Assembly: GCF_006345805.1 (NCBI RefSeq)
Contig: NC_043024.1
Span: 2,356,001-2,420,000 of the forward strand
Length of the DNA stretch: 64,000 nt
Direction of reading: 5' to 3'
Origin: Octopus sinensis
Lineage: Eukaryota
The position numbers were made by a program, and so were the translations under genes. The notes under the pieces are model-generated. The model was not told where the DNA came from. It saw only the letters and a list, made by a program, of their open reading frames with translations, and ran no database searches. This document shows, in pieces, positions 1,819-40,376 of this stretch (positions within the stretch are counted from its first letter, which is position 1; each line of letters begins with the position of its first letter).

Positions 1819-1889
1819 CGGTGTTGTTCCAAATATTTTCCTTTTGTCAGCGACACCGGTGTCATAAATAAAAGTTCCCTAACATAATT
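1819..1889 (-). promoter_or_regulatory. Conserved upstream module of ZF1
   Basis: AATTATGTTAGGGAAC .. GACACCGGTGTC (palindrome) .. GGAAAATAT .. CAACACCG. Confidence 0.55.
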
Positions 1890-2665
1890 TAACACCTTCA
1901 GAATCATCTTCAATATTATCAATTTGCTCTGTCCCACTATATCCAATATAGATTTTAAAAAAAACGGTACTACTAGCGAACAGTGGTCCCGGTGCACGCG
2001 CCCATGCGCTAGCTAGTCGTAAGTAGTCGATCCTACGACTTTTTAACCCTAACCTTAGTTTGTTTATAAAAATAATTTATTTACTTAGTTTAAAAAATTA
2101 TTTAGGATCGACTACTTACGACTACCTAGCGCGGATGCACGCGTGCGCGCACCGGGACCACTGTTCGCTACTAGTACGAAAACAGAAAAACTATCATCCC
2201 GTAAAATATTGCTTGCCCGCTAGACATAGCAGCTAATTCCCGTTCCGATTACACTAATCTTCCCATTAAAGAGACGAGCAGATTTGATTCTGTTGTTCTT
2301 AAGTGTTTCTCACCAATTTTTACCTATGGACCCCTTTGGTTCCTATTTTATTCGGATGAACCCTCCGAGACATTTGATCCGCCGGGTTCGGTCTCCACAG
2401 GCAGAAGTTGACAAGTCCTTGCTCACAAAAAGTTAAAATCTAACGGCCATCCTCATCGTAGTTTTGTTCGTCTATGGCCTCCGTTGCCCAGGGCGTTGCA
2501 GTATTTGCATGCAAGCAGCTTCGAGGAGCCACAGGTGGGAACTATGTACCAGGTGAGGACCAAAACGGATGAACTACTCCGAAGAGCACCACATGTCCCC
2601 CTATCAAAGGTACTACTACATCCAGATGCCCATACACAAGCACGTATAAGCACACACACACATAG

Positions 2666-2745
<80 letters not shown>

Positions 2746-3014
2746 AAAGACAGATAAATAGATAGATAGATAGATAGATTAGACAGACAAATAGATAGAC
2801 AGATAGATAGATAGATAGATAGACAGACAAATAGATAGATAAATAGACAGGTAGATAGATAGATAGATAGATAGATAGACAGGTAGATAGATAGATAGAC
2901 AGACAGATAGATAGACAGACAAATAGATAGATAAATAGACAGGTAGATAGATAGACAGACAAATAGATAGATAGATAGACAGACAGACACACAGACAAAT
3001 AGATAGATAGATAG
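2666..3014. repeat. Compound (TA)n(GA)n(TAGA/CAGA)n microsatellite
   Basis: Read directly from sequence. Confidence 0.95.
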
Positions 3015-3830
3015 TAAAACTGAAATAGAATGTGGGTCTGAGGGTGTCTATAGAAGAGACTATAAGACATCCAAAGGCATCACCACAGCCAAAGATCAAT
3101 GACCAGTGGCGAAGGGAAATAACCACTAAGAGTTTTACCTTTAAAACAAGGCTTTTCCACCTCCATATTTCAAAGAGGTTTCAGGCCAGCAAGGTTTGGG
3201 GCCTAAAGCTACGCTAAAAGGCTAAACCCCTTATGAGCGAGAAACCCAGAGTAACCCTATAAACCAGCCCACTCCACTATAATATATATTTATATATATG
3301 TATATATATGGTTACAATGAGGATATAAATAACAATTGCAGGTGAATTTGTGTGTGTAAGCACCGTCCCGACTGGCCTCGTGCCGGTGGCACGTAAAAAG
3401 CACCATCCGTCCGTGGCAGTTTGCCAGCTCCGTCTGGCACGTAAAAAGCACCCACTACACTCACGGAGTGGTTGGCGTTAGGAAGGGCATCCAGCCGTAG
3501 AAACACTGCCAGATCAGACTTGGCCTGGTGCAGCCTTCTGGCATCCCAGACCCCAGTTGAACCGTCCAACCTATGCTAGCATGGAAAGCGGACGCTAAAT
3601 GATGATATATATATATATATTCTGCATGATTCTTTACTTCATATTAGCTGTAAGAATGCCTTGTACACTCTCAGAATGCCTTGTACACTCTCAGTAGTGT
3701 TAGAATCTAATGAAATTGCTTTTCCATGTTTTTCAGTTATGGATAAGTATGTGTGTGTGTGTGTGCTTGTGTGTACATGACTAAAGGACACTGAAAACTG
3801 CTTCTATGTAATATTTTAACCAGAGTTTAA

Positions 3831-4279
3831 CCCTTTTGTTACTGTATCTATTTAGAGATGCTCTGTGTTTCTTTCAATTATTTTAAATATAATAAAGAAT
3901 TTAGTAAAATAACTTTAAGCTAGTGTTAGGAACATAAATTGTGACTAAGGTTTGGTGGAAGATTTTAATTCAGAACTTTTGAAAAGACATTTGTACTCAG
4001 AGCAAAAGGTAGTTTCAGCCAGGTTGGTATCAAAAGGGTTAAATTAATCATTTGTTAACCCTTTTGTTACCATATTTCTGTTGAGATGCTCTGTGTTTCT
4101 TTCAATTAATTTTAAATATAACAAAGAATTTAGTAAAATAACTTGGTTATCATTAAGCTAGTATTAGGAACATAAATTGTGACTAAGGTTTGGTGGAAGA
4201 TTTTAATTAAAAAATTATGAAAACAAGACATTTGTACTCAGAGCCAGAACCAGTTTCAGTTGGGTTGGTAACGAAAGGG
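3831..4279. mobile_element. Two tandem piggyBac-type MITEs (3831-4038, 4059-4279)
   Basis: TTAA|CCCTTT ... AAAGGG|TTAA on both copies. Confidence 0.8.
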
Positions 4280-4989
4280 TTAAAAGAACAGATTTTACTT
4301 ATTGTCAGGTTGTTGGCACTATTGTCACAATGATCTAGAAAGTTAAGAAACATCAACAGTCTTTTCTTTGCAAAGAATTTAAATCAAATTTGCAGATATC
4401 TTAATTTTATTGAAGCTAATTGTGAACATACTTTGTAGAGGTGAGCAAATGAGAAATAACAGTTGCTACCCAAACACAAAAATCGTGTTACACTGTAATT
4501 TTCCGTATTCTTCACAATGATATGATTTTTGGATCTTTTCGGTTTGAACGGCAGTTTTTTTAAATAATTTCTAGGTAACTAAAAAACTTTAAACTTCGTA
4601 TACTGGTAGAATGTGTTTATAAAACATCTTTTTTCTTTTCGCTTTATTGAGAAAATTCTATAGTTTGTAAGATATTTGTTGTTCTTTTTTTCTTCAATTT
4701 CTGCAATTTCAACCAATCAATGGCATCTATTGAGGTGAAAACATTCTGTGCTGTATGAATATGTCCCTCGTTTAAGAAACAGATTGGGTTTATTTATATT
4801 TGTGAAGAAAAAAAAGATACTCTTCCCCCACCATTAACCCTAAAACAGATTGAAATGCAATAGATCGATACTAGGGTCATAATTATGGGTGACAATTTCA
4901 TATGACGCCGCTAGAAAAAAACTGCCGTTCAAACTGAAAAGATCCCGATTTTTCGTTATGGTTACTAGATGAAAGACTTGTTACATATT

Positions 4990-6084
4990 TCACGGTGAAT
5001 ATGTTCCACTCAAGTGTGTATTTTTATGCGCCAGCAATTCTTTCCTAGACACAAAAGACTTCATACAAACAACACAGTTTTCCCCCGTGTGAGTCCTTTT
5101 ATGAGATGTCAGTTCACTGCTGGAGACAAAACATTTCCCACAGATCTCACAGCGATGCTGTTTGTCCCCAGTATGTCTCCGTTTGTGCATCGTTAAGTCA
5201 CTGTTAGAAACGAAAGACAAACCACAAATTTCACAACGAAAGGGCTTTTCTCCAGTATGCCTTCGTATGTGAAATATAAGATGAGAATTCTGCCTGAAAG
5301 ATTTCCCGCATATTTCACAACGAAAAGGTCTCTCTCCCGTGTGGGTCCGTTTATGAGTTATCAAGTTGCTACTATCAAGGAACGAATCCCCGCAAATGTC
5401 ACAACGAAAAGGGGTTTCCCCCGTATGCGTCCGGTTGTGTTTGGTTAATTCGTCATTAGCCACGAACGATTTACCGCAGATTTCACAACGAAACGGTTTC
5501 TCGCCAGAATGTATTTTCTTGTGATGTACCAAATTACTACTAGACACGAAAGATTTCCCACATATATCACAATGATAGGGTTTCTCTCCCGTATGACAAC
5601 GCGTGTGGATAACAAAACTCTTTTTCCAGAAGAAGGATTTCCCACAGATCTTGCAGCAAAACGGTTTTTCTCCAGTGTGTAGGTTCCTATGTTCCTTCAG
5701 GTTGCTTACACTCACGAACGACTTATCACATATTTCGCAATGGAACGGTTTCTCTCCCGTATGGCTACTCATATGAGCAACAAGCTTGCATTTGTGAACA
5801 AAATATTTCCCACAGATTTCGCAACGGAACAGTCTTTCTCCAGAATGGAACCTCTTGTGACTTGTCAAATTACTTTTGGACACATAGGATTTCTCACATA
5901 CTTCACAGCGGAATGGTTTCTGGTGGATTTTCTTGTGCTTTAATAAATCATCTTCTGAAGTGAATGGTTTCTTGCAAATACCACAGCTATATTCTGTAAT
6001 ATTCCTGCGTAAAGATCTTCGTTTAGTAAATGGTTCTTTACATAAAGATTCCTTACCATTGTCCAAATTATCAACATTTTCCAT
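4990..6084 (-). CDS. ZF2: C2H2 zinc-finger protein, 12 fingers (subfamily A)
   Basis: 364-aa ORF, 12 fingers, N-terminus MENVDNLD..GKESLCKEPFTK..NITEYSC. Confidence 0.93.
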   Translation of the reverse strand: MENVDNLDNGKESLCKEPFTKRRSLRRNITEYSCGICKKPFTSEDDLLKHKKIHQKPFRCEVCEKSYVSKSNLTSHKRFHSGERLFRCEICGKYFVHKCKLVAHMSSHTGEKPFHCEICDKSFVSVSNLKEHRNLHTGEKPFCCKICGKSFFWKKSFVIHTRCHTGEKPYHCDICGKSFVSSSNLVHHKKIHSGEKPFRCEICGKSFVANDELTKHNRTHTGETPFRCDICGDSFLDSSNLITHKRTHTGERPFRCEICGKSFRQNSHLIFHIRRHTGEKPFRCEICGLSFVSNSDLTMHKRRHTGDKQHRCEICGKCFVSSSELTSHKRTHTGENCVVCMKSFVSRKELLAHKNTHLSGTYSP

Positions 6085-6244
6085 ATTAATTAACCAGGAA
6101 TTCTTAAAAGCTGTAGAAATGTCTGTGGATATAATCTATTACAGCTAAGTGTTATGTCTTCGATATCATGAAACTTCCTTTACGTGATTTAATTAATTTA
6201 ATTGGACTAATTATAACTAATTATAAAAATGCTGAGGGAAGGTG

Positions 6245-6318
6245 CCCGGTGTCAAAGGAAAACTGTTCTCCACTGAATAACATCGGTGACAGTTGACAAA
6301 AGGTTCCCTAACATAATT
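6245..6318 (-). promoter_or_regulatory. Conserved upstream module of ZF2
   Basis: AATTATGTTAGGGAAC .. GTCACCGAT .. GACACCGGG. Confidence 0.55.
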
Positions 6319-8663
6319 TAACACACTAGAGACACTATCGAATTTATCGCACCAGAAGCGAATACACCGATTCCTTTATTTTGGCACTCTGGCCACGAAC
6401 ACAGAAGGGGAAACTACAAGGACAGACACAGCACCAAAGTGGGGACAATAAACATAAAACGAATGAAGATGAATATTATATAATAATGGAAAATGAAATG
6501 GCTATATGGGCCCAAGAAGCGAATACCCTACCCTGCAAAATAACGAACAAACTTCAGCCTGGTTGATCTACATGCTAGAACTAGCAGCTAAAGTCTCTTT
6601 AGATTATATCCTACTGTTTCACAAAAAAATACATTTGCTATTATAGTCCAAGATAAGAAGAGAAAAATAAGAAAACTACATTTTCACAAGTGAAATGTCC
6701 GTGACAAGTCATCGATCTTTTCGAGTGTGCTGGTGTGGGAATAAAGGATCGATGATTTTATTCAAACCATAAGGGTTAAACGAAGAGGGGACAATATACG
6801 AGACAAAGAGGGGTCGGGACTTATAGTATGAGATTACATAGCCGTATTTCGTCTGTCGTTACGTTCTGAGTTCAAATTCCGCCGAGGTCGACTTTGCCTT
6901 TCATCCTTTCGGGGTCGATAAATTAAGTACCAGTTTCCATCTGAGGTCGATGTAATCGACTTAATCCCTTTGTCCTTGTTTGTCCCCTCTATGTTTAGCC
7001 CCTTGTGGGCAATAAAGAAATACATTATACTTTCAGATGAAAATGAAAGAATGAATGGACGTGGAATGGGTTTGAACCCCCACCAACCGCATTCCTGCGA
7101 TGAACCGTTTACTTCGTCCTTCTCCAGATATGCTTTCCCTATTAAGTGATATAAAAAGAGGACGTAACTTCGGTATAGGTACCGGATACATTTCAAGAAA
7201 GTGTTTTTTTCTTTTATATATATATATGGGGGGGTTAGGGTTAGGGGTGGGAGAAAAGGGTTTCTGTTATCTTCAGAAATGTAAACAAAGCCACTTCCGG
7301 TACTTATACCGAAGGATCGCCCCTCTTTGGTGTGCTTACGTCCCCGTAACCTTGCAGTTGGGTAAACGAGGCTTTAAAGAATAGGTACGGAGGTGTATTA
7401 ATTCCACTAAAAATTGAAGGCGGTGCCCCCGTATGGCCGCAGTCTAATTACTGAAACATGTAAAAGATAGTATCTTTTATCTGTTAATTTTCCATTTGAT
7501 CCTACAGAAGAAATAACAAGGTTTTGTATGGAAGACCAGCAGTCGCCCATGCATACCAGCCTCACCTCTCCGTGCCACCGATGTTACCCAAGGGAAAAGC
7601 AAAGGGACCGATACAGCTTGGCAACAGAAACGTTGCAGCTCATTTCTACAGCTGAGTGAACTGGAGCAACGTGAAACAAAGAGTCTTGTTCAAGAACACA
7701 ACACACAGCCTGGTCTGGGAATTAAACTCACTACCTCATGGTTGTGAGCACTGCATTTTAGCCACTAAGCCACACACAATCACTGTCAGAGGATCAATTC
7801 TGTATTTTACTATCATGTGTTACTCTCTTTTACTCGTTTCAGTCATTTGACTGTGGCCATGCTGGAGCACCGCCTTTAGTTGAGCAAATCGACCCCAGGA
7901 CTTCTATCGGTCTCTTTTGCCGAACCACTTAGTTATGGGGGATGTAAACACACCAGCACCAGTTGTCAAGCGATGTTGATGGGACAAACACAGACACATA
8001 TATATATATATATACAGTTCCATCTGTCAAATCATTCCACCCATGCCAGCATGGAAGGCAGACATTAAGCGATAATGACGATGATGAAAATTATAAAAAT
8101 TTTTTTTTTAGGAATACATTTGAAAACATTAGAGACATTTTTTAATAAAATATGTTGGTGAGATAAAATGAAAAACTAGTAACCAAGTTTTAGAAGCAGA
8201 AATTAAGGTTTATTTGGATAAAAATGTTGAATTTCAATTAGATAACAATATATAGGCAACAACGTTCACTTCTGATGTTTCAAATTCATTGAAGGCTGTA
8301 GCATCGTAAATTACCAGTCTCTGAGGACAGAGGGGAAGCAATAAAAAAAATAACAGATTCAAAAATAAAATAGAAACACAAGAAATTCTTTCATTATTAT
8401 ACAAGTCCTGTATTTTCCAGCGTATCAGTCGACATAGCAGAGAATGTAAATATATAAACATCTAAGCACCACCAGTATCTTCCCAAATCTTGCTGCATCT
8501 CACAAGGAATTTTTGGTCCTACAAAGTAGTCTTGGTGCATGAGTCGTGTTACCTTTCCTGGTTGTAAACTGGAATGGATTTAAAGCTTGGCAGGCCCTGG
8601 ATACTTCAAGCTGTGGGTCTTTCATACACAGAAATTAAAATCCATGAAAAATTATCAAATTTA

Positions 8664-9082
8664 GGATCTTTTCGGTTTGAACGGCAGTCTTTTCTAGCGG
8701 TGTCATATGAAATTGTCACCCATAATTATGACCCTAGTATCGATCTATTGCATTTCAATGTTTTAGGGTTAGTGTTAGGGGTGGGTGGAAGGGTATCTTT
8801 TTTTCTTCACAAATGTAAATAAACCCAATCTGCTTCTTAAACGAGGGACATATTCATACAGCACAGAACATTTTTTTTTACCTCAATAGACGTCAGTGAT
8901 TGGTTGAAATTGCAGAAATTGAAAAAAAAAAACAACAAATATCTTACAAACTATAGAATTTTCTCAATAAAGCCAAGAGAAAAGCATGTTTTATAAACAC
9001 ATTCTACCAGTATACGAAGTTTAAAAGTGTTTAGTTACATGGAAATTATTTTAAAAAACTGCCGGTCAAACCGAAAAGATCC
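8664..9082. mobile_element. ~415-bp MITE family M1 (TIR GGATCTTTTCGGTTTGAACGGCAG), 8-bp TSD
   Basis: Perfect TSD CAAATTTA at 8656-8663 / 9083-9090. Copies at 4531-4945, 10751-11026 (partial), 12950-13337, 14205-14621, 45122-45783 (internal duplication) and 54912-55341 (rearranged). Confidence 0.85.
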
Positions 9083-10268
9083 CAAATTTACATTTCAAAA
9101 TCAGTCTTTAAATACATCTGTCGGTGCAAAATTTTGTCATCTCAACAAAGTACTGCAAGTTCCATCAATTTACCATTCTATTCTACAATATGAGCAAAAC
9201 GACTTTCTATTTACACTTTGCAGCTGAAAAAATCTTTAATGAATTTCTCAAACTGTACATTACGGAGATGTACTTGCATAGCAAGTGACTTCATCTTAGA
9301 TCGTGTGCTGGAACGAAAACAATCGCAGCGTGGAAGGTGTTTATAAGCCATTTAAGAAACACACAAAAACCGTTTCTCATCTCTGCATCTTAAGTTTACT
9401 GATGCAGAAAGAACAACTTCCTCCAAGGTTGATGCTAATTTGTCTTTCATCTGTGTTTCTACACATTCCTGGCATCCAGTTCCAAGTATTCATACCAAAG
9501 TTTACCCAAAAAACCATTTAGATCCATCACTTTATGCAGATAAATTTCAACTCTTTAAATATCTTTGTGTACTGTTAAAATTTAGAAGAATCCATCAGAG
9601 AAGTTTCAAGACAACTCCCTTTATCTGAGCTCCATATCTTAGTTCAGGTATTTATTCCAAACCATCTTTAACAGAACGGTTTCTTCATAAATGACAGTGA
9701 TAAATATTACCTACAACTTTCGGGATTCATCATCATCATCGTTTAACGTCCATTTTCCGCGCTAGCATGGGTTGGACGGTTCGACCGGGGTCTGGGAAGC
9801 CAGGGCTGCACCAGGCTCCAGTCTGATCTGGCAGTGTTTCTACAGCTGGATGCCCTTCCTAACGCCAAACACTCCGCGAGTGTAGTGGGTGCTTTTTACG
9901 TGCCACCTGCACAGGTGCCAGGAGGGTCTGCCTGTTTTAATTAATCAAACCCATTAGACGTTAATCAAACTGCTCAAAATTAATTAATAAGCACCAAAAT
10001 TTCAATGTGCTAAGATCCTAAACATCAGGTCTCTCTCAGCTAGAAATACTGCAACGACCACAAAACAATACCAGTTCTCTCCCAGCCAGAAACACTGCAA
10101 TGAAAACAAAATACCAAGTCCCAGCAGGAAATACTGGAATGACAACAATACAATACTCCAGTCCAGTAGTTCTTGGAACTTTTAAGATTTATGGGGACGG
10201 AAGGGGTCCATAATTGTAGAAATTTCCATGTGTAGAACCAGTGAATATACTTCACTGAAAATTAGATA

Positions 10269-12193: not shown

Positions 12194-12320
12194 ATTCGTC
12201 GAACTGGAATTCTTGCAATCCGTAGAAAGATCTGGAACTGTATTCTGCCACAGAGCTGGGTTCTAGTGTCGGATATGATGGAAAATGCTTCCACTGGATG
12301 TGATCACATTCGTCGAAGAT

Positions 12321-12397
12321 GGCGGTGTCGATGGAAAAATATTCCTGCTTCTCAGTGTTACCGGTGACAGGCGCTTTAGTTCCCCCGGATATAATTC
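12321..12397 (-). promoter_or_regulatory. Conserved upstream module of ZF3
   Basis: AATTATATCCGGGGGAAC .. GTCACCGGT .. GGAATATT .. CGACACCGCC. Confidence 0.55.
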
Positions 12398-18120: not shown

Positions 18121-18254
18121 ACTAATTAACGAATGCTTACACGTTCACAAATGTCCATACATATAATGTATTAGGGTCCAATTGCTTGTCTTTGATGTCC
18201 TAACACAGTTTTTAACAAGATTTCAGGAAAATCAATTTCCTTCATACAAAGTCG

Positions 18255-18327
18255 GGCGGTGTAGTTGATAATTTTTCCCTTCTCTTAATGACAACGGCGT
18301 CGTTAGTTGAATGTCCCTAATATAAAT
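18255..18327 (-). promoter_or_regulatory. Conserved upstream module of ZF4
   Basis: AATTTATATTAGGGACA .. GACGCCGT .. GGGAAAAATT .. CTACACCGCC. Confidence 0.5.
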
Positions 18328-24107: not shown

Positions 24108-24236
24108 TTTCACTGATCGGAAATCCGTAACAGCTAAGAAATGTCAGTATCTATAATCCATTATGGTTCGATCTTTCTGAGTAATCCGATTTTCCTAACA
24201 TGAAATAAATTAAATTAATTCCGAAGAAAACAATTT

Positions 24237-24307
24237 CGCGACGTTGGAAAACTTTCCCAAACCGCAAATAAACCGGTGACGAAAGAAAACTGTCCCTCAT
24301 ACAATTT
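24237..24307 (-). promoter_or_regulatory. Conserved upstream module of ZF5
   Basis: AAATTGTATGAGGGACA .. GTCACCGGT .. GGGAAAGTT .. CCAACGTCGCG. Confidence 0.5.
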
Positions 24308-25557: not shown

Positions 25558-25805
25558 GGAGGCGCGTGGCTTAGTGGTTAGGATGTCAGCATCATGATCG
25601 TTAGATTGTGGTTTCGATTCCTGGACCGGGCGACACGTTGTGTTCTTGAGCAAAACACTTCATTTCACGTTGCTCCAGTCCATTCAGCTGGCAAAAATGA
25701 GTAACGTTGCGATGGACTGGCATCCCGTCCTGTTGGGGAACACATACGCCATAGAAACCGGGAAAACGGGGCCCATGAACCTGGCTAGGCTTTAAAAAGG
25801 GTGCA
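25558..25805 (+). mobile_element. tRNA-derived SINE family D (TTGTGTTCTTGAGCAAAACACTT central domain)
   Basis: A/B boxes present. Copies at 20500-20710 and 43060-43307 (-), fragment at 7640-7770 (-). Confidence 0.78.
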
Positions 25806-25806
25806 A

Positions 25807-25807
<1 letters not shown>

Positions 25808-25886
<79 letters not shown>
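25808..25886. repeat. (TA)n microsatellite between ZF5 and ZF6
   Basis: Read directly from sequence. Confidence 0.95.
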
Positions 25887-25887
<1 letters not shown>

Positions 25888-25966
25888 TATTGATCGGGCA
25901 TAGTCAGTTGCCAACACAAAATACAGAACAATGCGAAGAAATTTTCTAGCATTTCAGAATGTTTTA

Positions 25967-26040
25967 AATTATGTTAGACATCTTTCGATTTTGTCACCGG
26001 AATTATTGAGGTAAGGGGAAAATATATGAACGACACCGCC
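25967..26040 (+). promoter_or_regulatory. Conserved upstream module of ZF6
   Basis: AATTATGTTAG .. GTCACCGG .. GGAAAATAT .. CGACACCGCC. Confidence 0.6.
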
Positions 26041-26176
26041 GTCATCAGTAGCTTTGTAATTACCTCAGGTGAGTTAATTGGATCATGTAAACATTGTCTG
26101 ATTACATCTAAGCCGAGGAACTGGACCGTTATAGATTATAATCGCAGAGCTTTTACGAATTCCTGGTTGATTAATT

Positions 26177-27985
26177 ATGGAAGACGTTAAAGTCTTGGAC
26201 ACTTCCAACGTAATTGTCTTCGAGGAGCAGAATTTACAGAGTGGAACCTTTGCTGACCAAAAATCCTTTCATGGCAATATTCCTGGACAAAGCTGTGAGA
26301 TTTGTAGTAAAATATTCCCGTCGGAACCTGAATTATTATCCCACAAAGAAATCCACAAGACAGAGAAACCATTCCACTGCGAAATATGCGGAAAATCTTT
26401 CCCATCGAACGTTTTTCTGACAACCCACAGAAGGACACATACGGGAGAGAAACCGTTTCCTTGTGGAATGTGCGGCAAATCATTCGTAAATAATTCTCAT
26501 CTTGCAATTCACAAGCGAATACACACGGGAGAAAAACCATTCCAGTGTGAAATATGCGGCAAATCTTTCACCCAGAATGCCAGCCTTGTTATCCACGTAC
26601 GGAGCCATACAGGAGAAAAACCCTTCAAGTGTGATATATGTGGGAAGTATTTCGTTTCTAATATTATCTTGTCACGGCATAGAACGATTCATACAGGTGA
26701 GAGACCATTTCAGTGTGAAATATGCGGGAAATCTTTTATTAATAATTCGAAACTTGTTATTCATATTCGAAGTCATACGGGAGAGAAACCGTGCAGTTGT
26801 GATGTTTGCGGGAAGTGTTTCGTGTCCAATAGTAGTTTGGCGATTCACAAAAGGCTTCACACGGGAGAGAAATTGTTACGCTGTGAAATCTGCGAGAAAA
26901 CTTTTATAAATAACTTGAAACTTGTCATTCATGAACGTCGACACACGGGAGAGAAACCGTTTCGCTGTGAAATCTGCGGGAAGGATTTTATTGAGAATTC
27001 TAAGCTTACGATCCATCAACGTAGGCACTCCGGAGAAAAACCGTACGTGTGCGAAGTATGTGGAAAATCTTATGTAAATAACAGTGATTTAAAAACTCAT
27101 GAGCGAATCCATAGTGGTGAAAAACCGTTCAGTTGTGAAATTTGCGGCAAGTCCTTTCTCTATAGCAGTAATTTAAAAAGACACGGTAGGATCCATACGG
27201 GAGAAAACCCCTTTCACTGTGACATATGTGGAAAATCGTTCTCTGATAATTCTAATCTCGTAGTTCACAAACGTAGACACACCGGGGAATTACCACATCA
27301 TTGTGAAATCTGTGGCAAGTCGTTTGTAAGTAACAGTGATTTAAAGACCCATGAACGAATCCACACTGGAGAGAAACCCTTCCATTGTGATATCTGTGGG
27401 AAATCGTTCTATGTGAATTCACAGCTTGTAGTTCATAAAATGATGCATGCTGGGGAAAATCCTTATTCTTGTGATATTTGTGGGAAATCTTTTCTGACTA
27501 ATAGCTTGTTAAAAGCCCACAAAAAAATTCACAGTGGGGAGAAACCATATCATTGTGAGATCTGTGGGAAAGCTTTTCTTAAAAACCACGATTTAAAACG
27601 CCACAATCAAATCCACACAGGGGAGAAACCTTACCATTGTGATATTTGTGACAAGTCGTTCTGTAAAAATTCTTCCCTTGTTGTGCACAAGCAGATACAC
27701 ACGGGGGAAAAATCGTATCTTTGTGATATGTGTGGGAAATCCTTCTCCCGGAATTTCGATCTTATGAGCCACAAGCGTAGACACACTGGGGAAAAACCTT
27801 GCGCCTGTGGGGTCTGTGGGAAATCTTTTGTTAATAACAGTGACTTAAACATTCACAAACGGAAACACACGGGAGAAAAACTGTTTCACTGTGAAATCTG
27901 TGGGAAATCTTTTATTACCAGCAGTCTTTTAAAGAGACATGGACGCATACACTCTGGTGGGAAGGCTTTAAAATGTGAAACCTGA
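26177..27985 (+). CDS. ZF6: C2H2 zinc-finger protein, 20 fingers
   Basis: 602-aa ORF, 20 fingers, ends LKCET*. Confidence 0.95.
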   Translation: MEDVKVLDTSNVIVFEEQNLQSGTFADQKSFHGNIPGQSCEICSKIFPSEPELLSHKEIHKTEKPFHCEICGKSFPSNVFLTTHRRTHTGEKPFPCGMCGKSFVNNSHLAIHKRIHTGEKPFQCEICGKSFTQNASLVIHVRSHTGEKPFKCDICGKYFVSNIILSRHRTIHTGERPFQCEICGKSFINNSKLVIHIRSHTGEKPCSCDVCGKCFVSNSSLAIHKRLHTGEKLLRCEICEKTFINNLKLVIHERRHTGEKPFRCEICGKDFIENSKLTIHQRRHSGEKPYVCEVCGKSYVNNSDLKTHERIHSGEKPFSCEICGKSFLYSSNLKRHGRIHTGENPFHCDICGKSFSDNSNLVVHKRRHTGELPHHCEICGKSFVSNSDLKTHERIHTGEKPFHCDICGKSFYVNSQLVVHKMMHAGENPYSCDICGKSFLTNSLLKAHKKIHSGEKPYHCEICGKAFLKNHDLKRHNQIHTGEKPYHCDICDKSFCKNSSLVVHKQIHTGEKSYLCDMCGKSFSRNFDLMSHKRRHTGEKPCACGVCGKSFVNNSDLNIHKRKHTGEKLFHCEICGKSFITSSLLKRHGRIHSGGKALKCET

Positions 27986-28076: not shown

Positions 28077-28224
28077 GATTGTATACTGTCAACTTAACGT
28101 GACAGTCCTGTAAGGGAATTACACCACCGCTGTTTCAACGGAAGCAATCGATGATTCCTAGGGCTAAACAAAGGTGGTGTAATTCCCTTACAGGACTGTC
28201 ACGTTAAGTTGACAGTATACAACC
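28077..28224. mobile_element. Fold-back MITE M4 with perfect 50-bp arms
   Basis: 28079-28128 is the exact reverse complement of 28173-28222. Right half also at ~10450-10525; left 26 bp at ~33028-33053. Confidence 0.85.
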
Positions 28225-30844: not shown

Positions 30845-30912
30845 CAGAGTTCTTCTCATCACTCATTGGAACTAATAGCAGACTGGCTAAAACCGAAGAA
30901 TCAAACAGATCG

Positions 30913-30984
30913 AATTATGTCAGGAACTTTTAACTTATAACACCGGAATAATTATAGCGAGGGGAAAATATTAGCGACACCGCC
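30913..30984 (+). promoter_or_regulatory. Conserved upstream module of ZF7
   Basis: AATTATGTCAGGAAC .. ACACCGG .. GGAAAATAT .. CGACACCGCC. Confidence 0.6.
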
Positions 30985-31112
30985 AACCTGCTATTGTAAT
31001 TAGTTGAGCAAATTTCCTAAATTGATGTAAAAACAGTCCCAGGAAACCGAATCTTTTCAGATTAATATTAACAAAGTTTTCTGCAGCTTTTAAGAATTCC
31101 TGATCTTTAAAT

Positions 31113-32936: not shown

Positions 32937-33461
32937 GAGGTTTTTCCTTGTAAGTCTAAATTTATATCAGATATATAAAATTTCTAAATATCTCATAGAC
33001 ATATGTACGGTGGTTGAGCGATAGAGTGATTGTATACTGTCAACTTAACGTGAGAGAGTTATTGTTTGCGGAGACATATCCGGGTGTGGGTGGTTTGTCC
33101 TGGACTGTTTGAAGGAATTTGTCCAAAGACTTCTTGAATTTTGTGTGGTCAGTTTCTTTTTTGCCAGGCGAAGTTTTTTTGTTTTCGAATATCAAAAACA
33201 TCTTTCTCGTTGCTTTCAAGATGTAACACCGATATTCATCAAGTTTTTTTTTTTTTTTAATAAGAGTTCGGCGTGACTTTTTTTACATTTCTCCCACCCC
33301 TAACCCCCCATATATTAAAAAATACACTTTCTTGAAATGTATCCGGTACTTATACCGAAGTTACGCCCAGAGTCCTTCTCATCACTCATCAGAACTAATA
33401 GCAGACTGGCTAAAACCGAAGAATCAATCAGATCGAATTGGAACTGTATATGAATCGATGA

Positions 33462-33533
33462 AATTATGTCAGGGACTTTTAGCTTATAACACCGGAATAA
33501 TCATAGCGAGGGGAAAATATTAGCGACACCGCC
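33462..33533 (+). promoter_or_regulatory. Conserved upstream module of ZF8
   Basis: Near-identical to the ZF7 module. Confidence 0.6.
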
Positions 33534-33661
33534 AACCTGCTATTGTAATTAGTTGAGCAAATTTCCTAAATTGATGTAAAAACAGTCCCAGGAAACCGAA
33601 TCTTTTCAGATTAATATTAACAAAGTTTTCTGCAGCTTTTAAGAATTCCTGATCTTTAAAT

Positions 33662-35460
33662 ATGGACGATGTTAATCCTTGGGATCTTCAAACGATGTAA
33701 ATTCCGTTTCACGGACAGTCAAAGGTGAGAAAGTTTTATTCAATGAAGAGTCCACTGATCAGAGATCGATACAGAGAAATATTACTGAATATAGCTGTGG
33801 CATTCGTAAGGAAAAATATATTTCAGAGCATGAATTAATCATACACAAGGACATCCATAAAAAGGAGAAACCATTCCAATGTGAAATATGCGGGAAATAT
33901 TACACACAGAATGCCAGCCTTGTTGTCCACGTACGGGGTCACACGGGAGAAAGACCCTTCAAGTGTGATATATGCGGGAAATATTTCGTTTCTAATACTA
34001 TTTTGTCACGGCATAGAACGATTCATACAGGTGAGAGGCGGTTTCGGTGTGAAATATGCGGCAAATCTTATATTAGTAATTCGAAACTTGTTGTCCACGA
34101 ACGGGGTCACACGGGAGAAAAACCCTTCAAGTGTGATATCTGCGGGAAATATTTTGTGTCTAATACTGCTTTGTCAAAGCATAAAGTGATTCATACAGGT
34201 GAGAAACCATTTCAGTGTGAAATCTGCGGGAAATCTTTTCTTTATAATTCGAAACTTGTTGTCCATATTCGTAGTCATACGGGAGAGAAACCGTGGAGTT
34301 GTGATGTTTGCGGGAAGTGTTTCGTGTCCAGTAGTAGTTTGGCGATTCACAAAAGGCTTCACACGGGAGAGAAATTGTTACACTGTGAAATCTGTGGGAA
34401 AACTTTTATAAATAACTTGAAATTTGTCATTCATGAACGTAGGCACATCTGCGGGAAGGATTTTATCGAGAATTCTAAGCTTACGATCCACAAACGTACC
34501 CACACTGGGGAAAAACTATATTGTTGTGAGGTGTGTGGGAAATTTTTTGTTAATAGTAGTGTTTTAAAAACCCATGACCGAATCCATAGTGGGGAGAAGC
34601 CTTATCAGTGCGAATCGTGTGGCAAGTCTTTTCTCAGCAATAGTAATCTTCAAAGACACAAACGAATTCATACTGGGGAAAATCCATTCCACTGCGAAAT
34701 CTGTGGCAAGTCATTCTCTGATAATTCAAATTTTTTGGTTCACAAACGGAGACACATTGGGGAATTGTCTTATTGCTGTGAAATCTGTGGTAAATCGTTC
34801 GTAAATAACAGTGATTTAAAGACCCATGAACGAATCCACTCTGGAGAGAAACCCTTCCATTGTGATATCTGTGGGAAATCGTTCTATGTGAATTCACAGC
34901 TTGTAGTTCATAAAATGATGCATGCTGGGGAAAATCCCTTCTGCTGTGATATCTGTGGAAAGTCATTTCTTACGATCAGTTTATTAAAAACGCACAGAAA
35001 AATCCACTCTGGAGAGAAACCATATCACTGTGAGATCTGTGGGAAAGCTTTTCTTAAGAACCACGATTTAAAACGTCACAATCAAATCCACACAGGGGAG
35101 AAACCTTATCATTGTGATATTTGTGACAAGTCGTTTGGTAAAAATTCTTCCCTTGTTGTGCACAAGCAGATACACATGGGGGAAAAGTCCTATCTTTGTG
35201 ATATGTGTGGGAAATCCTTCTCCCGGAATTTCGATCTTATGAGCCACAAGCGTAGACACACTGGGGAAAAACCTTGTGCCTGTGGGGTCTGTGGGAAATC
35301 TTTTGTTAATAACAGTGACTTAAACATACACAAACGGAAACACACGGGTGAAAAACCCTATTGTTGTGAAGTATGTGAGAAATCCTTCATTTCTAGCAGT
35401 CTTTTAAAGAGACACGAACGACTGCACACCAGAGGGAAGCCTCTCAAATGTGAGACATAA
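33662..35460 (+). pseudogene. ZF8: C2H2 ZF gene with a 1-nt deletion shortly after the ATG (pseudogene or assembly indel), 18 intact fingers
   Basis: ATGGACGATGTTAATCC-TTGGG versus ZF7 ATGGACGATGTTAATCCTTTGGG. The ATG frame gives MDDVNPWDLQTM*. The long frame 33679..35460 opens only at TTG. Confidence 0.8.
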
Positions 35461-35492
35461 GATATGGGTCTGTTTTGTAATCTAAACCTATA

Positions 35493-35761
35493 TATTTCTT
35501 TACTACCCACAAGGGGCTAAACACAGAGTGGGGACAAACAAGGACAGACAAGCGGATTAAGTCAATTACGTCGACCCCAGTGTGTAACTGGGTCTCAATT
35601 TATTGACCCCGAAAGGATGAAAGGCAAAGTTGACCTCGGCGGAATTTGAACTCAGAAGTAAAGACAGACGAAATACCTATTTCCTTACTATCCACAAGGG
35701 GCAGATGAAATACGGCTATGCATTTCACCCGGTGTGCCAACGTTTCTGCCAGCTTGCCGCC
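35493..35761 (-). mobile_element. SINE family A just after the ZF8 stop
   Basis: 18-bp TSD TTGTAATCTAAACCTATA at 35475-35492 / 35762-35779. Confidence 0.85.
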
Positions 35762-36670
35762 TTGTAATCTAAACCTATAATGTGTCCACAAATATTCAAT
35801 GGTGAACATGTGTGCATAAAATGCCAGAAATCACTTTCTTTTTGAATTCGTATTATGTAGGCCCACAAATATGTTCTTTGAAAGAAAATCATTTTCATTT
35901 AGGGTCTGTTTTCCATGCTAGCACGGGTAAGACAGTTTAACTGGAGCTGGTAAGCCGGAGAGTTGCACCAGGCTCCAGTCTGTTTTGGCATGGTTTCGAC
36001 AGCTGGACGCCAACCTATTTCTTTACTACCCACAAGGGGCTAAACACAGAGAGGACAAACAAGGACAGACACACGGATTAAGTCGATTACATCGACCCCA
36101 GTGCGTAACTGGTACTTATTTAATCGACCCCGAAAGGATGAAAGGCAAAGTCGACCTCGGCGGAATTTGAACTCAGAAGTAAAGACAGACGAAATACCTA
36201 TTTCCTTACTATCCACAAGGGGCAGATGAAATACGGCTATGCATTTCACCCGGTGTGCCAACGTTTCTGCCAGCTTGCCGCCTTGTAATCTAAACCTATA
36301 ATGTGTCCACAAATATTCAATGGTGAACATGTGTGCATAAAATGCCAGAAATCACTTTCTTTTTGAATTCGTATTATGTAGGCCCACAAATATGTTCTTT
36401 GAAAGAAAATCATTTTCATTTAGGGTCTGTTTTCCATGCTAGCACGGGTAAGACAGTTTAACTGGAGCTGGTAAGCCGGAGAGTTGCACCAGGCTCCAGT
36501 CTGTTTTGGCATGGTTTCGACAGCTGGACGCCAACCTATTTCTTTACTACCCACAAGGGGCTAAACACAGAGAGGACAAACAAGGACAGACACACGGATT
36601 AAGTCGATTACATCGACCCCAGTGCGTAACTGGTACTTATTTAATCGACCCCGAAAGGATGAAAGGCAAA
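35632..36670. repeat. 521-bp tandem duplication
   Basis: Identical ORF-track peptides at 35985 and 36506; sequence repeats at a +521 offset. Confidence 0.9.
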
Positions 36671-37118
36671 GTCGACCTCGGTGGAATTTGAACTCAGAAT
36701 GTAACGGCAAACGAAATACCTATTTCTTTACTACCCACAAGGGGCTAAACACAGAGGGGACAAACAAGGACAGACACACAGATTAAGTCGATTACATCAA
36801 CCCCAGTGCGTAACTGGTACTTATTTAATCGACCCCGAAAAGATGAAAGGCAAAGTCGACCTCGGTGGAATTTGAACTCAGAACGTAACAGCAGACGAAA
36901 TACCTATTTCTTTACTACCCACAAGGGGCTAAACACAGAGAGGACAAACAAGGACAGACACACGGATTAAGTCGATTACATCGACCCCAGTGCGTAACTG
37001 GTACTTATTTAATCGACCCCGAAAGGATGAAAGGCAAAGTCGACCTCGGCGGAATTTGAACTCACAACATAAGGGCAGACGAAATACTGCTAAGCATTTT
37101 GCCCGGTGTGCTAACAAT
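36016..37118 (-). mobile_element. SINE family A copies and tandem units, partly within a 521-bp duplication
   Basis: Repeated TTTCTTTACTACCCACAAGGGGCTAAACAC..GAACTCAG units. Confidence 0.8.
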
Positions 37119-38084
37119 TCTGTTAACCATTCTACAAAGTGTACTGGGTGTCTTTTACATCTTGAACTAGGAAATCATTTGTGAACTAATGGAGTTCTTT
37201 GACAAGTGAATATACCAAACATTGGAAATCTTTTTTGTGAAGCAGGCTGCACGAGATGCAACTCATTGTAAGGTGGGCCACACTACTAAAACAAATTCAA
37301 GACCAGTTTTCATTAGGGGTGCCATTCAGAAAGTTTTCCAGGTTGCCCATGACTGGAATACACATTAGATAAAATCTATATCAAAGTGAAATATGTGGGA
37401 TATAATTGGATTAATTAAATCTTCATTTGTAATTCATAGCTGAACACAGACAGAAGAACCCTTTCACTGTGGAATATGCTATCATCATTCTCTAAATTCT
37501 AGTATTGTTGTCCAAGAATATTCCTTGGAGAAAGATCATTCACTGTTTGTCTCAAAGACACAAAGTTAAAAAAATGGCTTTATAAATTTGAAACGAGGGG
37601 GAAATTAATTCTGTTGAAAATGTTTGAATTTAAGTAAAATATACACCGGTGAAAAACATTACTGAAATGATTTGTTAAAAAGATGGTTCATAAACAGAAA
37701 TATGAGAAATTTATGTAAAATATTACCTCTAAAATTTACAACAAAATGTTCAAATAATTTACATATAAATTGAAATATTTTTTTATAATAATTGTATACA
37801 TTTTAAATTAAAATGTTTAAGCTATGCTTGTTAATGTTATTTTCTGAACAATAAATATCTTTCTCAATATCTCGTTAGCATTCCGATTATTCTGTTAAAT
37901 CTATTGCTTATTTATTCACATTGTTTTGAATTAATTATGCTTTACAGTTCTATATTTAAGAGATGAGGAATTATGTACATTATTTATATGGGCATATGGC
38001 ACAGTGGTTAAGAGCGCAGGCTATTAAAACCAAGATTCCAAGTTCGATTCCAGGCAGTGACCTGAATAATGATGACAACTGGTA

Positions 38085-38482
38085 CTTAATTTATCGACCC
38101 CGAAAGGATGAAAGACAAAGTTGACCTCGGTGGAAAGTCTTATAATATTCTTTTTCTACTCTAGGCACAAGGCCCGAAATTTTGGGGAAGGGGGTCAGTC
38201 GATTAGATCAACCCCAAAAGGATGAAAGGCCTTGGTGGAATTTGAACTCAGAATGTAAAGACAGACGAAATACCTATTTCTTTACTACACACAGAGGGGA
38301 CAAACAAGGATAGACAAACGGATTAAGTCGATTATATCAACCCCAGTGTGTAACTGGTACTTATTTAACCGACCCCGAAAGGATGAAATGCAAAGTCGAC
38401 CTTGGCGGAATTTGAACTCAGAACGTAAAGACAGATGAAATACTGCTGAGCACTTCACCCGGTGTGCTAACGTTTCTGCCAG
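38085..38482 (-). mobile_element. SINE family A
   Basis: Same units, with the head at the right end. Confidence 0.75.
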
Positions 38483-40332
38483 CTCGCCGCCTTTGAAATG
38501 CCATATGAAATGCTGCTAAGCATTTTGCCTGGCATGCTAATGATTCAGTTGGAAATGACCAATTGTTGTGTGCTCTGTGTATGTGCCAATGTTGCCGGAA
38601 TGAATTATTGGTTAATTTTTATTGCAAACTGGTCATTTAGTGACTTATATAACAAGTAAATCAATCGAAAAAACTATTGATAAATTTCAAAACACCACTA
38701 GAGTGAAGCTTTCCAAAATGCATCCACCTGAAAGAAAATGCATTATAATAGATATACCAAGATTTGAAACAGTAACAAAAATACGGTAAAACCGAGGTAC
38801 ACCTGGTAGGAGAGAGGGTGAGGTACGAAACCCTGCCCCCGGTGATAAAATAGGAGGAATAGGTCCTTATTTTACAGACTAAATAAGATTTGTTTTGATA
38901 ATATAACAGATAATGAACAGTAAAAACGCTTGAGGGTGGGGCTCAAGCAAGGACGTCCATCCTCGTTGTATATATATTCATTTTCATTCTATGACCGTTG
39001 CCTGACTGGCCCTCGTGCTGGTGGCACATAAAAGCACCCACTACACTCTCGGAGTGGTTGGCGTTAGGAAGAGCATCCAGCTGTAGAAACTCTGCCAGAT
39101 CAAGATTGGAGCCTGGTGCAGCCATCTGGTTCGCCAGTCCTCAGTCAAATCGTCCAACCCATGCTAGCATGGAAAGTGGACGTTAAACGATGATGATGAT
39201 GTCCCCACGTATACTGTCTTTGTCCTTGTACCATCCCATCTGTGTTTCAGGCCTCGTGCCAAATAAAGAATTCAATTATTGGTTAATTTGTGGAAAGCTG
39301 TGTATAATAATTTAATAACACCAAGGAAACATTTAAACAGGATTTATTATCACCTCACATCCAACCCATGCTAGCATGGAAAACGGACGTTAAACGATGA
39401 TGATGATGATGTGTCTTATGAAGTTGGTCCTGCGTGACAAATAAGCAGGTAGAGTCAACAAGATGAAAGAAATATGATACAACACGCAAAGAAGCTGGAT
39501 ATCAAAATTTACCACAGGATTAAATAAAAGGAATATATATGTATGTGTGTGTGTATGTATGTATACATGCATGTATGCATGCGTGCGTGTGTGTGTATGT
39601 ATGCATGCATGTATGTGTGTGTATGGATGGATGTATGTATACACATGCGTCGCTTCATTTCTGACACCATAATTTGCATATCGGTTGAAGCATGCAGTTG
39701 TTAAAACGATTTGGCGAGACGTCTGCAACACTCTGCGAATTGGTGCCTAAAAAACCAATTCCATAACGGTTGGCAGGAAAAGTTAAACGTTGTTGTTTCC
39801 TATTAGATTAGCAACGATCGCTCAGAGCTAAGATGAAAAGCATTTTCAACCGCATCAATCTAATTTTTGTATACAAAGGACGACACTGTCGAACGTCTCT
39901 TTTCTAAGGCAAAAAGGGTCTGGTTTGAGGAGAATTGACTGTTATTTCATGCTGGTCGAGTGACCACACTGAGGCTCTTTCGTTGATACGTTATTGTCAG
40001 TTTGCTGGGTGATGGTCATTTTGCTTTACCAAGAATTGGGATACACTTGAAAGACCAAATTCATATCATCGAAGGGCCTTTTATGAATGTCTGAAATTAA
40101 GTAAAGGGACCATTTATTTATATCACCGTTGTACATAAGGTACCGACATTCCCTTATTGTGTTGAGTTTGGCTGATTTAATTACGAATTGCAGTAATTAT
40201 ATCATGCTATGATAAACGTAACATTGTGGATAACACAGGGATGACTTATATGTTAAATTGTTGGTGTTCTATCTCTGCCTAATTCTATATCTCCTTATAT
40301 CACAAACTACGTTACATCCTAAATTTAAGGAA

Positions 40333-40376
40333 GGGACAATATTACAAGCAGCACCGCGAACTTGCTATTGTAATTA
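40333..40376 (+). promoter_or_regulatory. Partial upstream module of ZF9
   Basis: GGGACAATATT .. CACCGCG .. CTATTGTAATTAG; only the distal motifs are recognisable. Confidence 0.4.

What the first reader, a model, noticed from the sequence alone, without database searches (positions are those of the whole stretch)
1819..40376. A four-motif, fixed-length upstream module shared by the subfamily A ZF genes
Seen in sequence: ZF1-ZF8 each carry, ending ~128-137 nt before the ATG (161 in ZF2), a 71-77 bp block AATTATGTTAGGGAAC - (G/A)(T/A)CACCGG - GGAAAATAT - CGACACCGCC, with some motifs degenerate in individual genes. ZF9 keeps the distal half. Spacers between motifs have diverged while the motifs and spacing persist, on both strands of the cluster. 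Inference: a compact cluster-specific core promoter or co-regulation cassette that makes each ~2-kb duplication unit self-sufficient, which could help explain the cephalopod C2H2 expansion. The TCACC core followed by an AT-rich box is loosely reminiscent of snRNA PSE architecture; that comparison is speculative.
Basis: partly seen in the sequence, partly recalled or inferred. Interest (0 to 1): 0.75.

Follow-up and report, generated by a model that had tools for sequence, protein, structure and literature searches.

The report
Shared upstream module of octopus zinc-finger paralogs
Nine tandemly duplicated zinc-finger genes of Octopus sinensis each keep the same ~73-bp, rigidly spaced motif block about 130 bp before their start codon; it is most likely a promoter-proximal control element inherited with every gene copy, which is real and tidy but an expected kind of thing.

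Summary
The window is Octopus sinensis chromosome CM016886.1. All nine subfamily-A C2H2 genes, on both strands, carry the block, and nothing else in the 64 kb does.

- **Detection:** profiles built without a given gene still find that gene's block at the expected place (E 5e-12 to 7e-5 for ZF1-ZF7).
- **Conservation:** motif columns are 63-73% identical between paralogs. Spacers are 40-45%, four-fold synonymous sites 47%, and DNA further upstream cannot be aligned.
- **Length:** the block measures 70-75 bp, while the next segment varies from 81 to 113 bp (F=41, p=1e-4).

New points:
- The four motifs are two tandem ~38-bp units, each AGGGA, then about 18 bp, then CACCG.
- ZF9 also keeps M1-M2, displaced about 235 bp upstream.
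- A TAATTA box, an AGATTATA box at -44 to -54, and a pyrimidine/AG element at -39 to -13 are also conserved. The last of these is conserved more strongly than the block.

The best reading is a constrained promoter-proximal cis-regulatory module. "Core promoter" is unproven because no transcript data were reachable. There is no canonical TATA and no conserved splice donor. The snRNA PSE analogy and the link to the family expansion are unsupported. I rate it a new member of a known kind, of modest interest.

The parts
1817..1889 (-). ZF1 block, M1-M4 (AATTATGTTAGGGAAC .. GACACCGG .. GGAAAATAT .. CAACACCGTT)
   Evidence: (held-out E 4.7e-12)
6245..6318 (-). ZF2 block. M3 and M4 are degenerate and the block ends ~161 nt before the ATG.
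   Evidence: (held-out E 1.9e-5, first 56 profile positions only)
12321..12396 (-). ZF3 block. M1 is degenerate; M2 and M4 are exact.
   Evidence: (held-out E 7.1e-5)
18255..18327 (-). ZF4 block
   Evidence: (held-out E 5e-9)
24237..24306 (-). ZF5 block. M4 is degenerate.
   Evidence: (held-out E 1.3e-6)
25967..26040 (+). ZF6 block
   Evidence: (held-out E 5.1e-11)
30913..30984 (+). ZF7 block. A ~27-bp deletion removed the weakly conserved pre-block and ends at the start of M1.
   Evidence: (held-out E 2.7e-9)
33462..33533 (+). ZF8 block. ZF8 is a recent duplicate of ZF7 with a frameshifted ORF.
40334..40358 (+). ZF9 M3-M4 half (GGACAATAT .. CAGCACCGCG) in the usual position
40095..40129 (+). 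ZF9 displaced M1-M2 half (AATTAAGTAAAGGGAC .. ATCACCGT), ~235 bp upstream of the M3-M4 half. It is followed by a degenerate copy of the post-block sequence, which suggests a partial local duplication.
   Evidence: (E 4e-4 to 5e-3 in every run)
26054..26062 (+). TTGTAATTA (TAATTA-type) box 10-20 bp after M4, ZF6 example. Other copies: ZF1 1790-1798(-), ZF2 6218-6226(-), ZF7 30994-31002, ZF8 33543-33551, ZF9 40368-40376. It is weak or absent in ZF3, ZF4 and ZF5.
   Evidence: (pairwise identity 0.71)
6097..6137 (-). Proximal conserved element, ZF2 example: AGATTATA at -53, then GACATTTCTACAG|CTTTTAAGAATTCC at -39 to -13. Other copies: ZF1 1696-1736(-), ZF3 12206-12246(-), ZF4 18130-18169(-), ZF5 24119-24159(-), ZF6 26133-26163, ZF7 31059-31100, ZF8 33608-33649, ZF9 40455-40495.
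   Evidence: identity 0.62-0.67; 52% of columns at 7/8 or better
26177..27985 (+). ZF6 coding ORF (602 aa, 20 fingers), an example of the downstream gene. Other ATGs: ZF1 1682(-), ZF2 6084(-), ZF3 12193(-), ZF4 18120(-), ZF5 24107(-), ZF7 31113, ZF8 33661, ZF9 40508.
   Evidence: For ZF2, 4, 5, 6 and 9 the NCBI CDS equals the single ORF from the same ATG.

Best explanation
The block is a promoter-proximal cis-regulatory module under selective constraint. It was present upstream of the ancestral subfamily-A gene and has been kept in every tandem copy.

It consists of two tandem ~38-bp units. Each unit has an AGGGA(A) half-site and, about 18 bp later, an (A/T)CACCG half-site. Bases between the half-sites drift at the neutral rate, but insertions and deletions are not tolerated.

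That pattern fits a DNA element that docks one or two sequence-specific factors, or a complex, with rigid geometry. It does not fit an RNA element or coding sequence.

The block lies 85-115 bp upstream of a second, position-locked conserved element next to the ATG (AGATTATA at -44 to -54, then a pyrimidine/AG stretch). Transcription most likely starts either just downstream of the block or at that proximal element. Either way, each copy carries its own start region and is transcriptionally autonomous.

- **Shown:** presence, specificity, conservation above neutral, and the spacing constraint.
- **Inferred:** factor binding, promoter role, and TSS position.
For: - Held-out detection at the expected place in ZF1-ZF7, with no copies elsewhere in 64 kb on either strand.
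- Motif identity of 0.63-0.73, against 0.40-0.45 in spacers, 0.47 at four-fold sites and 0.31 for unalignable far-upstream DNA.
- Conserved columns are clustered (P=0.003).
- Block length is 70-75 bp while the neighbouring segment is 81-113 bp (F=41.5, p=1.3e-4).
- The block profile is self-similar at an offset of 38 bp (permutation P about 0.01).
- It is not coding. Block lengths differ by non-multiples of 3, and stop codons occur in all frames (read directly from the sequence).
- There is no Rfam match and no conserved RNA structure.
- Paralog homology stops ~30-40 bp 5' of M1 and ~50 bp 3' of the stop codon, with SINE-like repeats beyond. What has survived is the gene plus ~230 bp of upstream DNA.
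- The annotated CDSs start at the same ATGs as single ORFs.
- The last ~35 nt before the ATG contain no upstream ATG in 8 of 9 genes, whereas the region between block and proximal element contains several.
Against: - No TSS, transcript or chromatin data could be obtained, so placing the block upstream of the TSS is inference.
- There is no canonical TATA box at a conserved position.
- A 3'-splice-site-like sequence (TTTCTACAG|C or CTTTTAAG|A) sits at -26/-18 in most genes. It would allow a far-upstream first exon, which would make the block intronic.
- Taken as a whole, the block is no more conserved than third codon positions.
- The motifs were picked after looking at the sequences, and only eight independent paralogs from one locus were available.
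- M3 and M4 are degenerate in ZF2 and ZF5, and the block is split in ZF9. The module is therefore either not indispensable or those copies are decaying.
Confidence: 0.58

Rival explanations
1. The block is transcribed. It would be all or part of a non-coding first exon (5' leader), joined to the coding exon by removal of a short (~65-90 nt) intron that ends at TTTCTACAG|C.
For: - The conservation profile runs conserved, then poorly conserved and indel-rich, then conserved, which looks like exon-intron-exon.
- Most genes have an acceptor-like pyrimidine tract plus AG, with a CTGAC branch-point-like sequence in front.
- ZF6 has a perfect CAG|GTGAGT donor at -108.
- The middle region carries upstream ATGs that would be removed by splicing.
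Against: - Apart from ZF6, no gene has a donor scoring above ~4 bits (a perfect donor scores 12.6) between the block and the ATG.
- The positionally conserved GT sites (TT|GTAATT, CAT|GTAAAC) lack both the -1 G and the +5 G.
- The conservation pattern of discrete half-sites with rigid spacing suits DNA recognition better than a 5' leader.
- There is no conserved RNA structure.
Confidence: 0.12
2. The block is intronic or otherwise not promoter-associated. The real first exon and promoter would lie far upstream, and the block would be an intronic enhancer, silencer or splicing element.
For: - An acceptor-like sequence lies at -26/-18 in most genes.
- No canonical core-promoter motif was found at a conserved position.
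Against: - Nothing upstream of about -240 is conserved between paralogs, so no shared upstream exon is visible.
- The ZF7 stop codon and the ZF8 ATG are only 725 bp apart, and ZF5 and ZF6 are head to head with 2.07 kb between their ATGs. That leaves little room for upstream exons.
- The annotated CDSs are single ORFs from the same ATG.
Confidence: 0.12
3. The block is a neutral relic. It would be the not-yet-erased remainder of the ancestral duplication unit, with apparent motifs produced by post-hoc choice of the best columns or by gene conversion.
For: - Whole-block conservation is about equal to that of third codon positions.
- A Fisher test of the block against the middle region plus third positions gives P=0.10.
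- Only eight independent copies were available.
Against: - Motif identity of 0.63-0.73 exceeds the 0.47 at four-fold sites and the 0.40-0.45 in the adjoining spacers.
- Conserved columns are clustered (P=0.003).
- Length variance is 40-fold lower than in the adjacent segment.
- Held-out profiles still recover each block.
- No pair other than ZF7/ZF8 is near-identical in the block (0.51-0.73), which argues against recent gene conversion.
Confidence: 0.08
4. The block is an snRNA-type (PSE plus TATA) or other Pol III-style promoter.
For: There is only a loose resemblance: a TCACC core followed by an A/T-rich box.
Against: - There is no snRNA or any other Rfam family in the window.
- A PSE sits ~55 bp from the start of a short RNA gene. 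Here the next conserved feature is a protein-coding ORF 130 nt away.
- M3 is not a TATA box in most copies.
- The block is a twofold repeat of AGGGA...CACCG, not a PSE-plus-TATA arrangement.
Confidence: 0.01

Closest known systems
Shared promoter and 5'-end architecture of the zebrafish chromosome-4 zinc-finger (FiNZ) genes
   Same: It is a large, tandemly expanded C2H2 family whose paralogs keep a common promoter architecture and highly conserved transcript 5' ends. Wells et al. 2023 (PMC10547256) describe 'sharp peak' FZNFs as sharing a distinct promoter architecture with a clear TATA box. Hadzhiev et al. 2019 (PMC6370886) designed morpholinos against the conserved 5' ends of 25 znf genes.
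   Different: In zebrafish the TSSs are mapped by CAGE and the defining element is a canonical TATA box. Here no TSS is known and no canonical TATA is conserved. The element is a double AGGGA...CACCG unit. The octopus proteins also lack a recognisable N-terminal effector domain.
Conserved sequence element (CSE) in front of each clustered protocadherin variable exon (from my own knowledge: Wu et al. 2001; Tasic et al. 2002)
   Same: Every tandemly duplicated unit carries its own short conserved promoter element at a roughly fixed distance upstream of the ATG. Surrounding DNA is diverged, so each unit can be transcribed independently.
   Different: The CSE is a single ~22-bp CGCT-containing motif bound by CTCF and serves stochastic promoter choice with splicing to constant exons. 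Here there are two 38-bp bipartite units, no constant exons, an unknown binding factor and no evidence of promoter choice.
snRNA proximal sequence element (PSE)
   Same: It is a short conserved upstream element followed by an A/T-rich box.
   Different: There is no snRNA gene here. The distance and the downstream gene type are wrong, and the element has a repeated bipartite structure. It is not a member.
Phylogenetic footprints in promoters of tandem paralogs in general
   Same: Islands of conservation with neutral spacers lie in otherwise unalignable upstream DNA of old duplicates. This is exactly the pattern seen here.
   Different: The unusual aspect is the strict spacing: 70-75 bp over about 0.9 substitutions per neutral site. 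That points to a composite site read as one unit rather than a loose cluster of independent sites.

Membership tests
Paralog-shared promoter-proximal module of a tandem gene family | Present upstream of each paralog in the same orientation as the gene, and absent elsewhere | tested here: met
   There are 9 of 9 subfamily-A genes with the block and no other copy in 64 kb on either strand. The subfamily-B gene at 59005 has none.
Paralog-shared promoter-proximal module of a tandem gene family | Conservation above the neutral divergence of the paralogs | tested here: met
   Motif identity is 0.63-0.73, against 0.47 at four-fold sites and 0.40-0.45 in spacers. Conserved columns are clustered. The caveat is that whole-block conservation is about equal to that of third codon positions.
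Paralog-shared promoter-proximal module of a tandem gene family | Constrained internal spacing | tested here: met
   The block is 70-75 bp and the adjacent segment 81-113 bp (F=41.5, p=1.3e-4).
Paralog-shared promoter-proximal module of a tandem gene family | Lies at or just upstream of the mapped transcription start | not testable with these tools
   No transcript contigs or UTR annotation could be reached.
Paralog-shared promoter-proximal module of a tandem gene family | Bound by a transcription factor or located in open chromatin | not testable with these tools
TATA-box core promoter | TATAWAWR at a conserved position ~30 bp upstream of the TSS | tested here: not met
   No match with 1 mismatch or fewer lies at a shared position. 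M3 qualifies only in ZF6, and the -50 box only in ZF4 and ZF5.
5'-UTR exon followed by a short intron | Conserved functional 5' splice donor between the block and the ATG | tested here: not met
   Only ZF6 has a strong donor (12.9 bits). The others score 4 bits or less.
5'-UTR exon followed by a short intron | Acceptor (pyrimidine tract plus AG) shortly before the ATG | tested here: inconclusive
   TTTCTACAG|C or CTTTTAAG|A is present in most genes. The same bases could equally be a conserved leader or initiator region.
snRNA PSE / Pol III type-3 promoter | Small RNA gene starting ~55 bp downstream of the element | tested here: not met
   There are no Rfam matches in the window and no conserved structure. 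A protein-coding ORF lies 130 nt downstream.
Transposable-element fragment (MITE or SINE) | Additional dispersed copies not tied to the genes | tested here: not met
   No copy lies outside the ZF upstream regions in this window. In contrast, the SINE-like GGAATTTGAACTCAGAAC repeat has 19 copies. A genome-wide count could not be made.

The most novel reading that the evidence does not exclude
The module could be a docking site for a long poly-zinc-finger protein, possibly one encoded by this cluster. Each 38-bp AGGGA...CACCG unit would then be the footprint of about 12 fingers. Every new gene copy would automatically come under family-wide auto- or cross-regulation, for example silencing or heterochromatin nucleation of the kind ZNF274 performs at human KZNF genes. 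Neutral spacers combined with strictly fixed spacing over 70-75 bp are what such a reader would impose.
Probability: 0.07. Interest if true: 0.7.

Novelty: new member of a known kind. Interest (0 to 1): 0.3.

Why it matters
The roughly 1,800-gene cephalopod C2H2 expansion is well known, but the papers I could search say nothing about its promoters. Holzinger et al. 2025 (PMC12513265) contains no occurrence of 'promoter', 'motif' or 'upstream'.

A compact, sequence-defined module in front of one subfamily offers three practical uses:
- a handle for genome-wide searches;
- a way to define subfamilies by their regulation;
- a bait for identifying the binding factor.

If it turns out to be the start region, it shows that about 230 bp of upstream DNA is enough to travel with each duplicate. 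This does not explain the expansion. Retaining the ancestral promoter is the default expectation for tandem duplicates.

Tried and rejected
**Searches for related sequence or transcripts that gave nothing**
1. Protein homology searches meant to reach orthologues or transcript contigs did not help. The N-terminal profile gave one irrelevant hit. Full-length ZF6 was swamped by vertebrate poly-ZF proteins, and no cephalopod protein, not even ZF6 itself, was returned.
2. The exact cluster look-up failed for all nine proteins, probably because the references included the stop codon.
3. The look-up of encoding contigs for ZF1, 2, 4, 5, 6, 7 and 9 returned only the O. sinensis chromosome and no RNA-derived contigs. 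TSS and splicing therefore could not be checked.
4. The 5 kb to the left of the window contains no further ZF gene or block.

**Readings tested and rejected**
5. RNA element: there is no Rfam hit and RNAalifold predicts zero pairs.
6. Coding exon: rejected because of stop codons in all frames and length differences that are not multiples of 3.
7. Short intron between block and ATG: there are no conserved donors.
8. Canonical TATA at M3 or at -50: not conserved.
9. Retrocopy origin: there is no poly(A) at the 3' end of homology and the genes are arranged in tandem.
10. CpG content: observed/expected is 1.35 in the block against 0.76 for the window, based on only 34 CpGs, which I judged too weak to use.

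**Other**
11. By-eye matches to known factor motifs (YY1 in ZF3 only, NFAT-like GGAAAAT, FOX-like GTAAACA, ETS-like CCGGAA) are not conserved across paralogs, so I dropped them.
12. Albertin et al. 2015 and Hadzhiev et al. 2023 are not held in the library.

Full report
**Where the window comes from.** The ZF6 protein (window 26177-27985) is encoded exactly once in the collection, on Octopus sinensis GCA_006345805.1 chromosome CM016886.1. The window corresponds to about 2,356,001-2,420,000 of that chromosome.

**The genes.** Six-frame scanning finds nine related C2H2 ORFs:

| Gene | ATG | Strand | Note |
|---|---|---|---|
| ZF1 | 1682 | - | |
| ZF2 | 6084 | - | |
| ZF3 | 12193 | - | |
| ZF4 | 18120 | - | |
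| ZF5 | 24107 | - | |
| ZF6 | 26177 | + | |
| ZF7 | 31113 | + | |
| ZF8 | 33661 | + | frameshifted recent copy of ZF7 |
| ZF9 | 40508 | + | |

- A different poly-ZF gene sits at 59005(+).
- For ZF2, 4, 5, 6 and 9 the NCBI gene call is the single ORF from the same ATG.
- The shared N-terminal ~45 residues match no Pfam domain.

**Is the block there?** Yes.
- Upstream alignments and per-motif mapping place M1-M4 at the coordinates listed under parts.
- M1-to-M2 spacing is 26-28 bp, M2-to-M3 is 19-24 bp and M3-to-M4 is 11-17 bp.
- The block ends 128-138 nt before the ATG in seven genes, 162 nt in ZF2 and 151 nt in ZF9.
- CGACACCGCC and the M1 16-mer are over-represented against shuffles. GGAAAATAT alone is not specific.
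- The strongest test is leave-one-out. A profile built from the other paralogs recovers each held-out block at the expected place, with E from 4.7e-12 to 7.1e-5 for ZF1-ZF7. No comparable hit occurs anywhere else on either strand of the 64 kb.

**Is it more conserved than neutral DNA?**

| Region | Pairwise identity |
|---|---|
| Four motifs | 0.63-0.73 |
| Spacers between motifs | 0.40-0.45 |
| 12 bp after M4 | 0.25-0.30 |
| Middle region | 0.49 |
| Far-upstream DNA (cannot be aligned) | 0.31 |
| Codon positions 1 / 2 / 3 | 0.68 / 0.74 / 0.52 |
| Four-fold sites with the same codon family | 0.47 (0.29 expected at random) |

- The four-fold value corresponds to about 0.9 substitutions per site.
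- The spacers therefore evolve at about the neutral rate, and the motif columns evolve like constrained coding positions.
- Conserved columns are clustered (runs test P=0.003).
- One caveat: the block as a whole has the same share of near-invariant columns as third codon positions (35%), and a Fisher test against the middle region plus third positions gives only P=0.10. The signal lies in the motif columns and in the spacing.
- Block length is 70-75 bp, whereas the equally long segment after it ranges from 81 to 113 bp (F=41.5, p=1.3e-4).
- No pair except ZF7/ZF8 is near-identical, so recent gene conversion does not explain the pattern.

**New anatomy.**
1. The block profile is self-similar at an offset of 38 bp (permutation P about 0.01). 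M1+M2 and M3+M4 are two copies of one bipartite unit: AGGGA(A), about 18 bp, then (A/T)CACCG.
2. ZF9 has not lost M1-M2. A copy about 80% identical to the consensus lies at 40095-40129, about 235 bp upstream of M3-M4. It is followed by a degenerate copy of the post-block sequence, which suggests a partial local duplication with complementary decay.
3. Three further conserved elements follow the block:
   - a TTGTAATTA box 10-20 bp after M4;
   - AGATTATA, locked at -44 to -54;
   - GACATTTCTACAGCTTTTAAGAATTCC at -39 to -13.

   The last ~55 bp before the ATG are the most conserved non-coding stretch (52% of columns at 7/8 or better).
4. Homology between old paralogs begins ~30-40 bp 5' of M1 and ends ~50 bp after the stop codon, with SINE-like repeats beyond.

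**What it is not.**
- It is not coding: there are stops in all frames, and lengths differ by non-multiples of three.
- It is not a known RNA and has no conserved RNA fold.
- It is not a dispersed repeat within this window.
- It is not a canonical TATA promoter.
- A short intron between block and ATG is poorly supported. Only ZF6 has a good donor, and all other candidates score 4 bits or less.
- An acceptor-like sequence at -26/-18 is common. A far-upstream first exon therefore cannot be excluded, although nothing upstream is conserved and the intergenic distances are short (725 bp from the ZF7 stop to the ZF8 ATG).

**Best explanation.** The block is a constrained promoter-proximal cis-regulatory module made of two rigidly spaced composite sites. 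It was inherited from the ancestral gene and kept in each duplicate. It acts at the DNA level by docking a factor or complex. Transcription starts either just after it or at the proximal conserved element.
- Presence, specificity, conservation and spacing are shown.
- Binding, promoter role and TSS position are inferred, because no transcript data could be reached.

**Comparison with known systems.**
- The closest parallels are the shared promoter and 5'-end architecture of zebrafish chromosome-4 ZNF genes (PMC10547256, PMC6370886) and the conserved sequence element in front of each protocadherin variable exon (from my own knowledge).
- The snRNA PSE comparison fails its defining features.
- Holzinger et al. 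2025 (PMC12513265) do not analyse promoters. They report that paralogs of the same expansion fall into different co-expression modules, which argues against simple co-regulation.

**Verdict.** The finding is a new member of a known kind (an ancestral promoter-proximal module retained by tandem paralogs) and is of modest interest. The rigid twofold bipartite structure is the most intriguing part.

Noticed in passing
window 180-381, 6863, 16262, 18427, 35641-38424, 41634-42025, 57251, 58676-58883: A SINE- or satellite-like repeat containing GGAATTTGAACTCAGAAC has 19 copies against 0 expected. It often forms short tandem arrays with a ~184-190-bp period. The arrays flank the 3' ends of ZF1, ZF4, ZF8 and ZF9 and lie upstream of ZF4 and the subfamily-B gene.
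   Followed up: partly
window 33661-35460 (+): ZF8 is a recent duplicate of ZF7 (2,548-bp period). It carries a 1-bp deletion in codon ~7 (CCTTTGGG to CCTTGGG) that breaks the frame, plus an internal loss within the finger array. It is probably a young pseudogene that still has an intact upstream block.
   Followed up: partly
window 30880-30913 vs 33425-33462: Relative to ZF8, ZF7 lacks ~27 bp immediately 5' of M1, and the deletion ends at the start of M1. The weakly conserved pre-block sequence therefore seems dispensable.
   Followed up: no
L005 14403-21095 (window 1682 leftwards and beyond the window start): NCBI annotates ZF1 as the first exon of an 871-aa multi-exon product that runs beyond the window, not as the simple 351-aa ORF. 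This is either a possible fusion model or genuine splicing out of the finger array.
   Followed up: no
window 49770-52191 (-), 47280-47612, 46083-46526, 48848-49484: The TE-rich interval between ZF9 and the subfamily-B gene contains LINE endonuclease and reverse-transcriptase-like ORF fragments, an assembly gap (run of N), and two blocks of ~75-90-bp tandem repeats that give repetitive ORFs on both strands.
   Followed up: no
window ~26087-26095, 31025-31035, 40400-40410 and equivalents: A conserved CATGTAAAC / GATGTAAAA motif lies ~50 bp after M4 in ZF6, 7, 8 and 9. It reads as a minimal ATG-TAA start-stop if transcribed, or as a forkhead-like GTAAACA site. It is not conserved in ZF1-4.
   Followed up: no
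window 25760-25890: A long (TA)n microsatellite lies immediately upstream of the ZF6 module, in the 2.07-kb head-to-head interval between the ZF5 and ZF6 ATGs.
   Followed up: no
all nine ZF proteins, residues 1-~45: The shared N-terminal region (M-E/D-D-V-x-x-L-D ... GEKPLC ... NITEYSC) has no Pfam match. The profile search found no significant relatives. It may be an undescribed cephalopod ZNF-associated N-terminal motif.
   Followed up: partly
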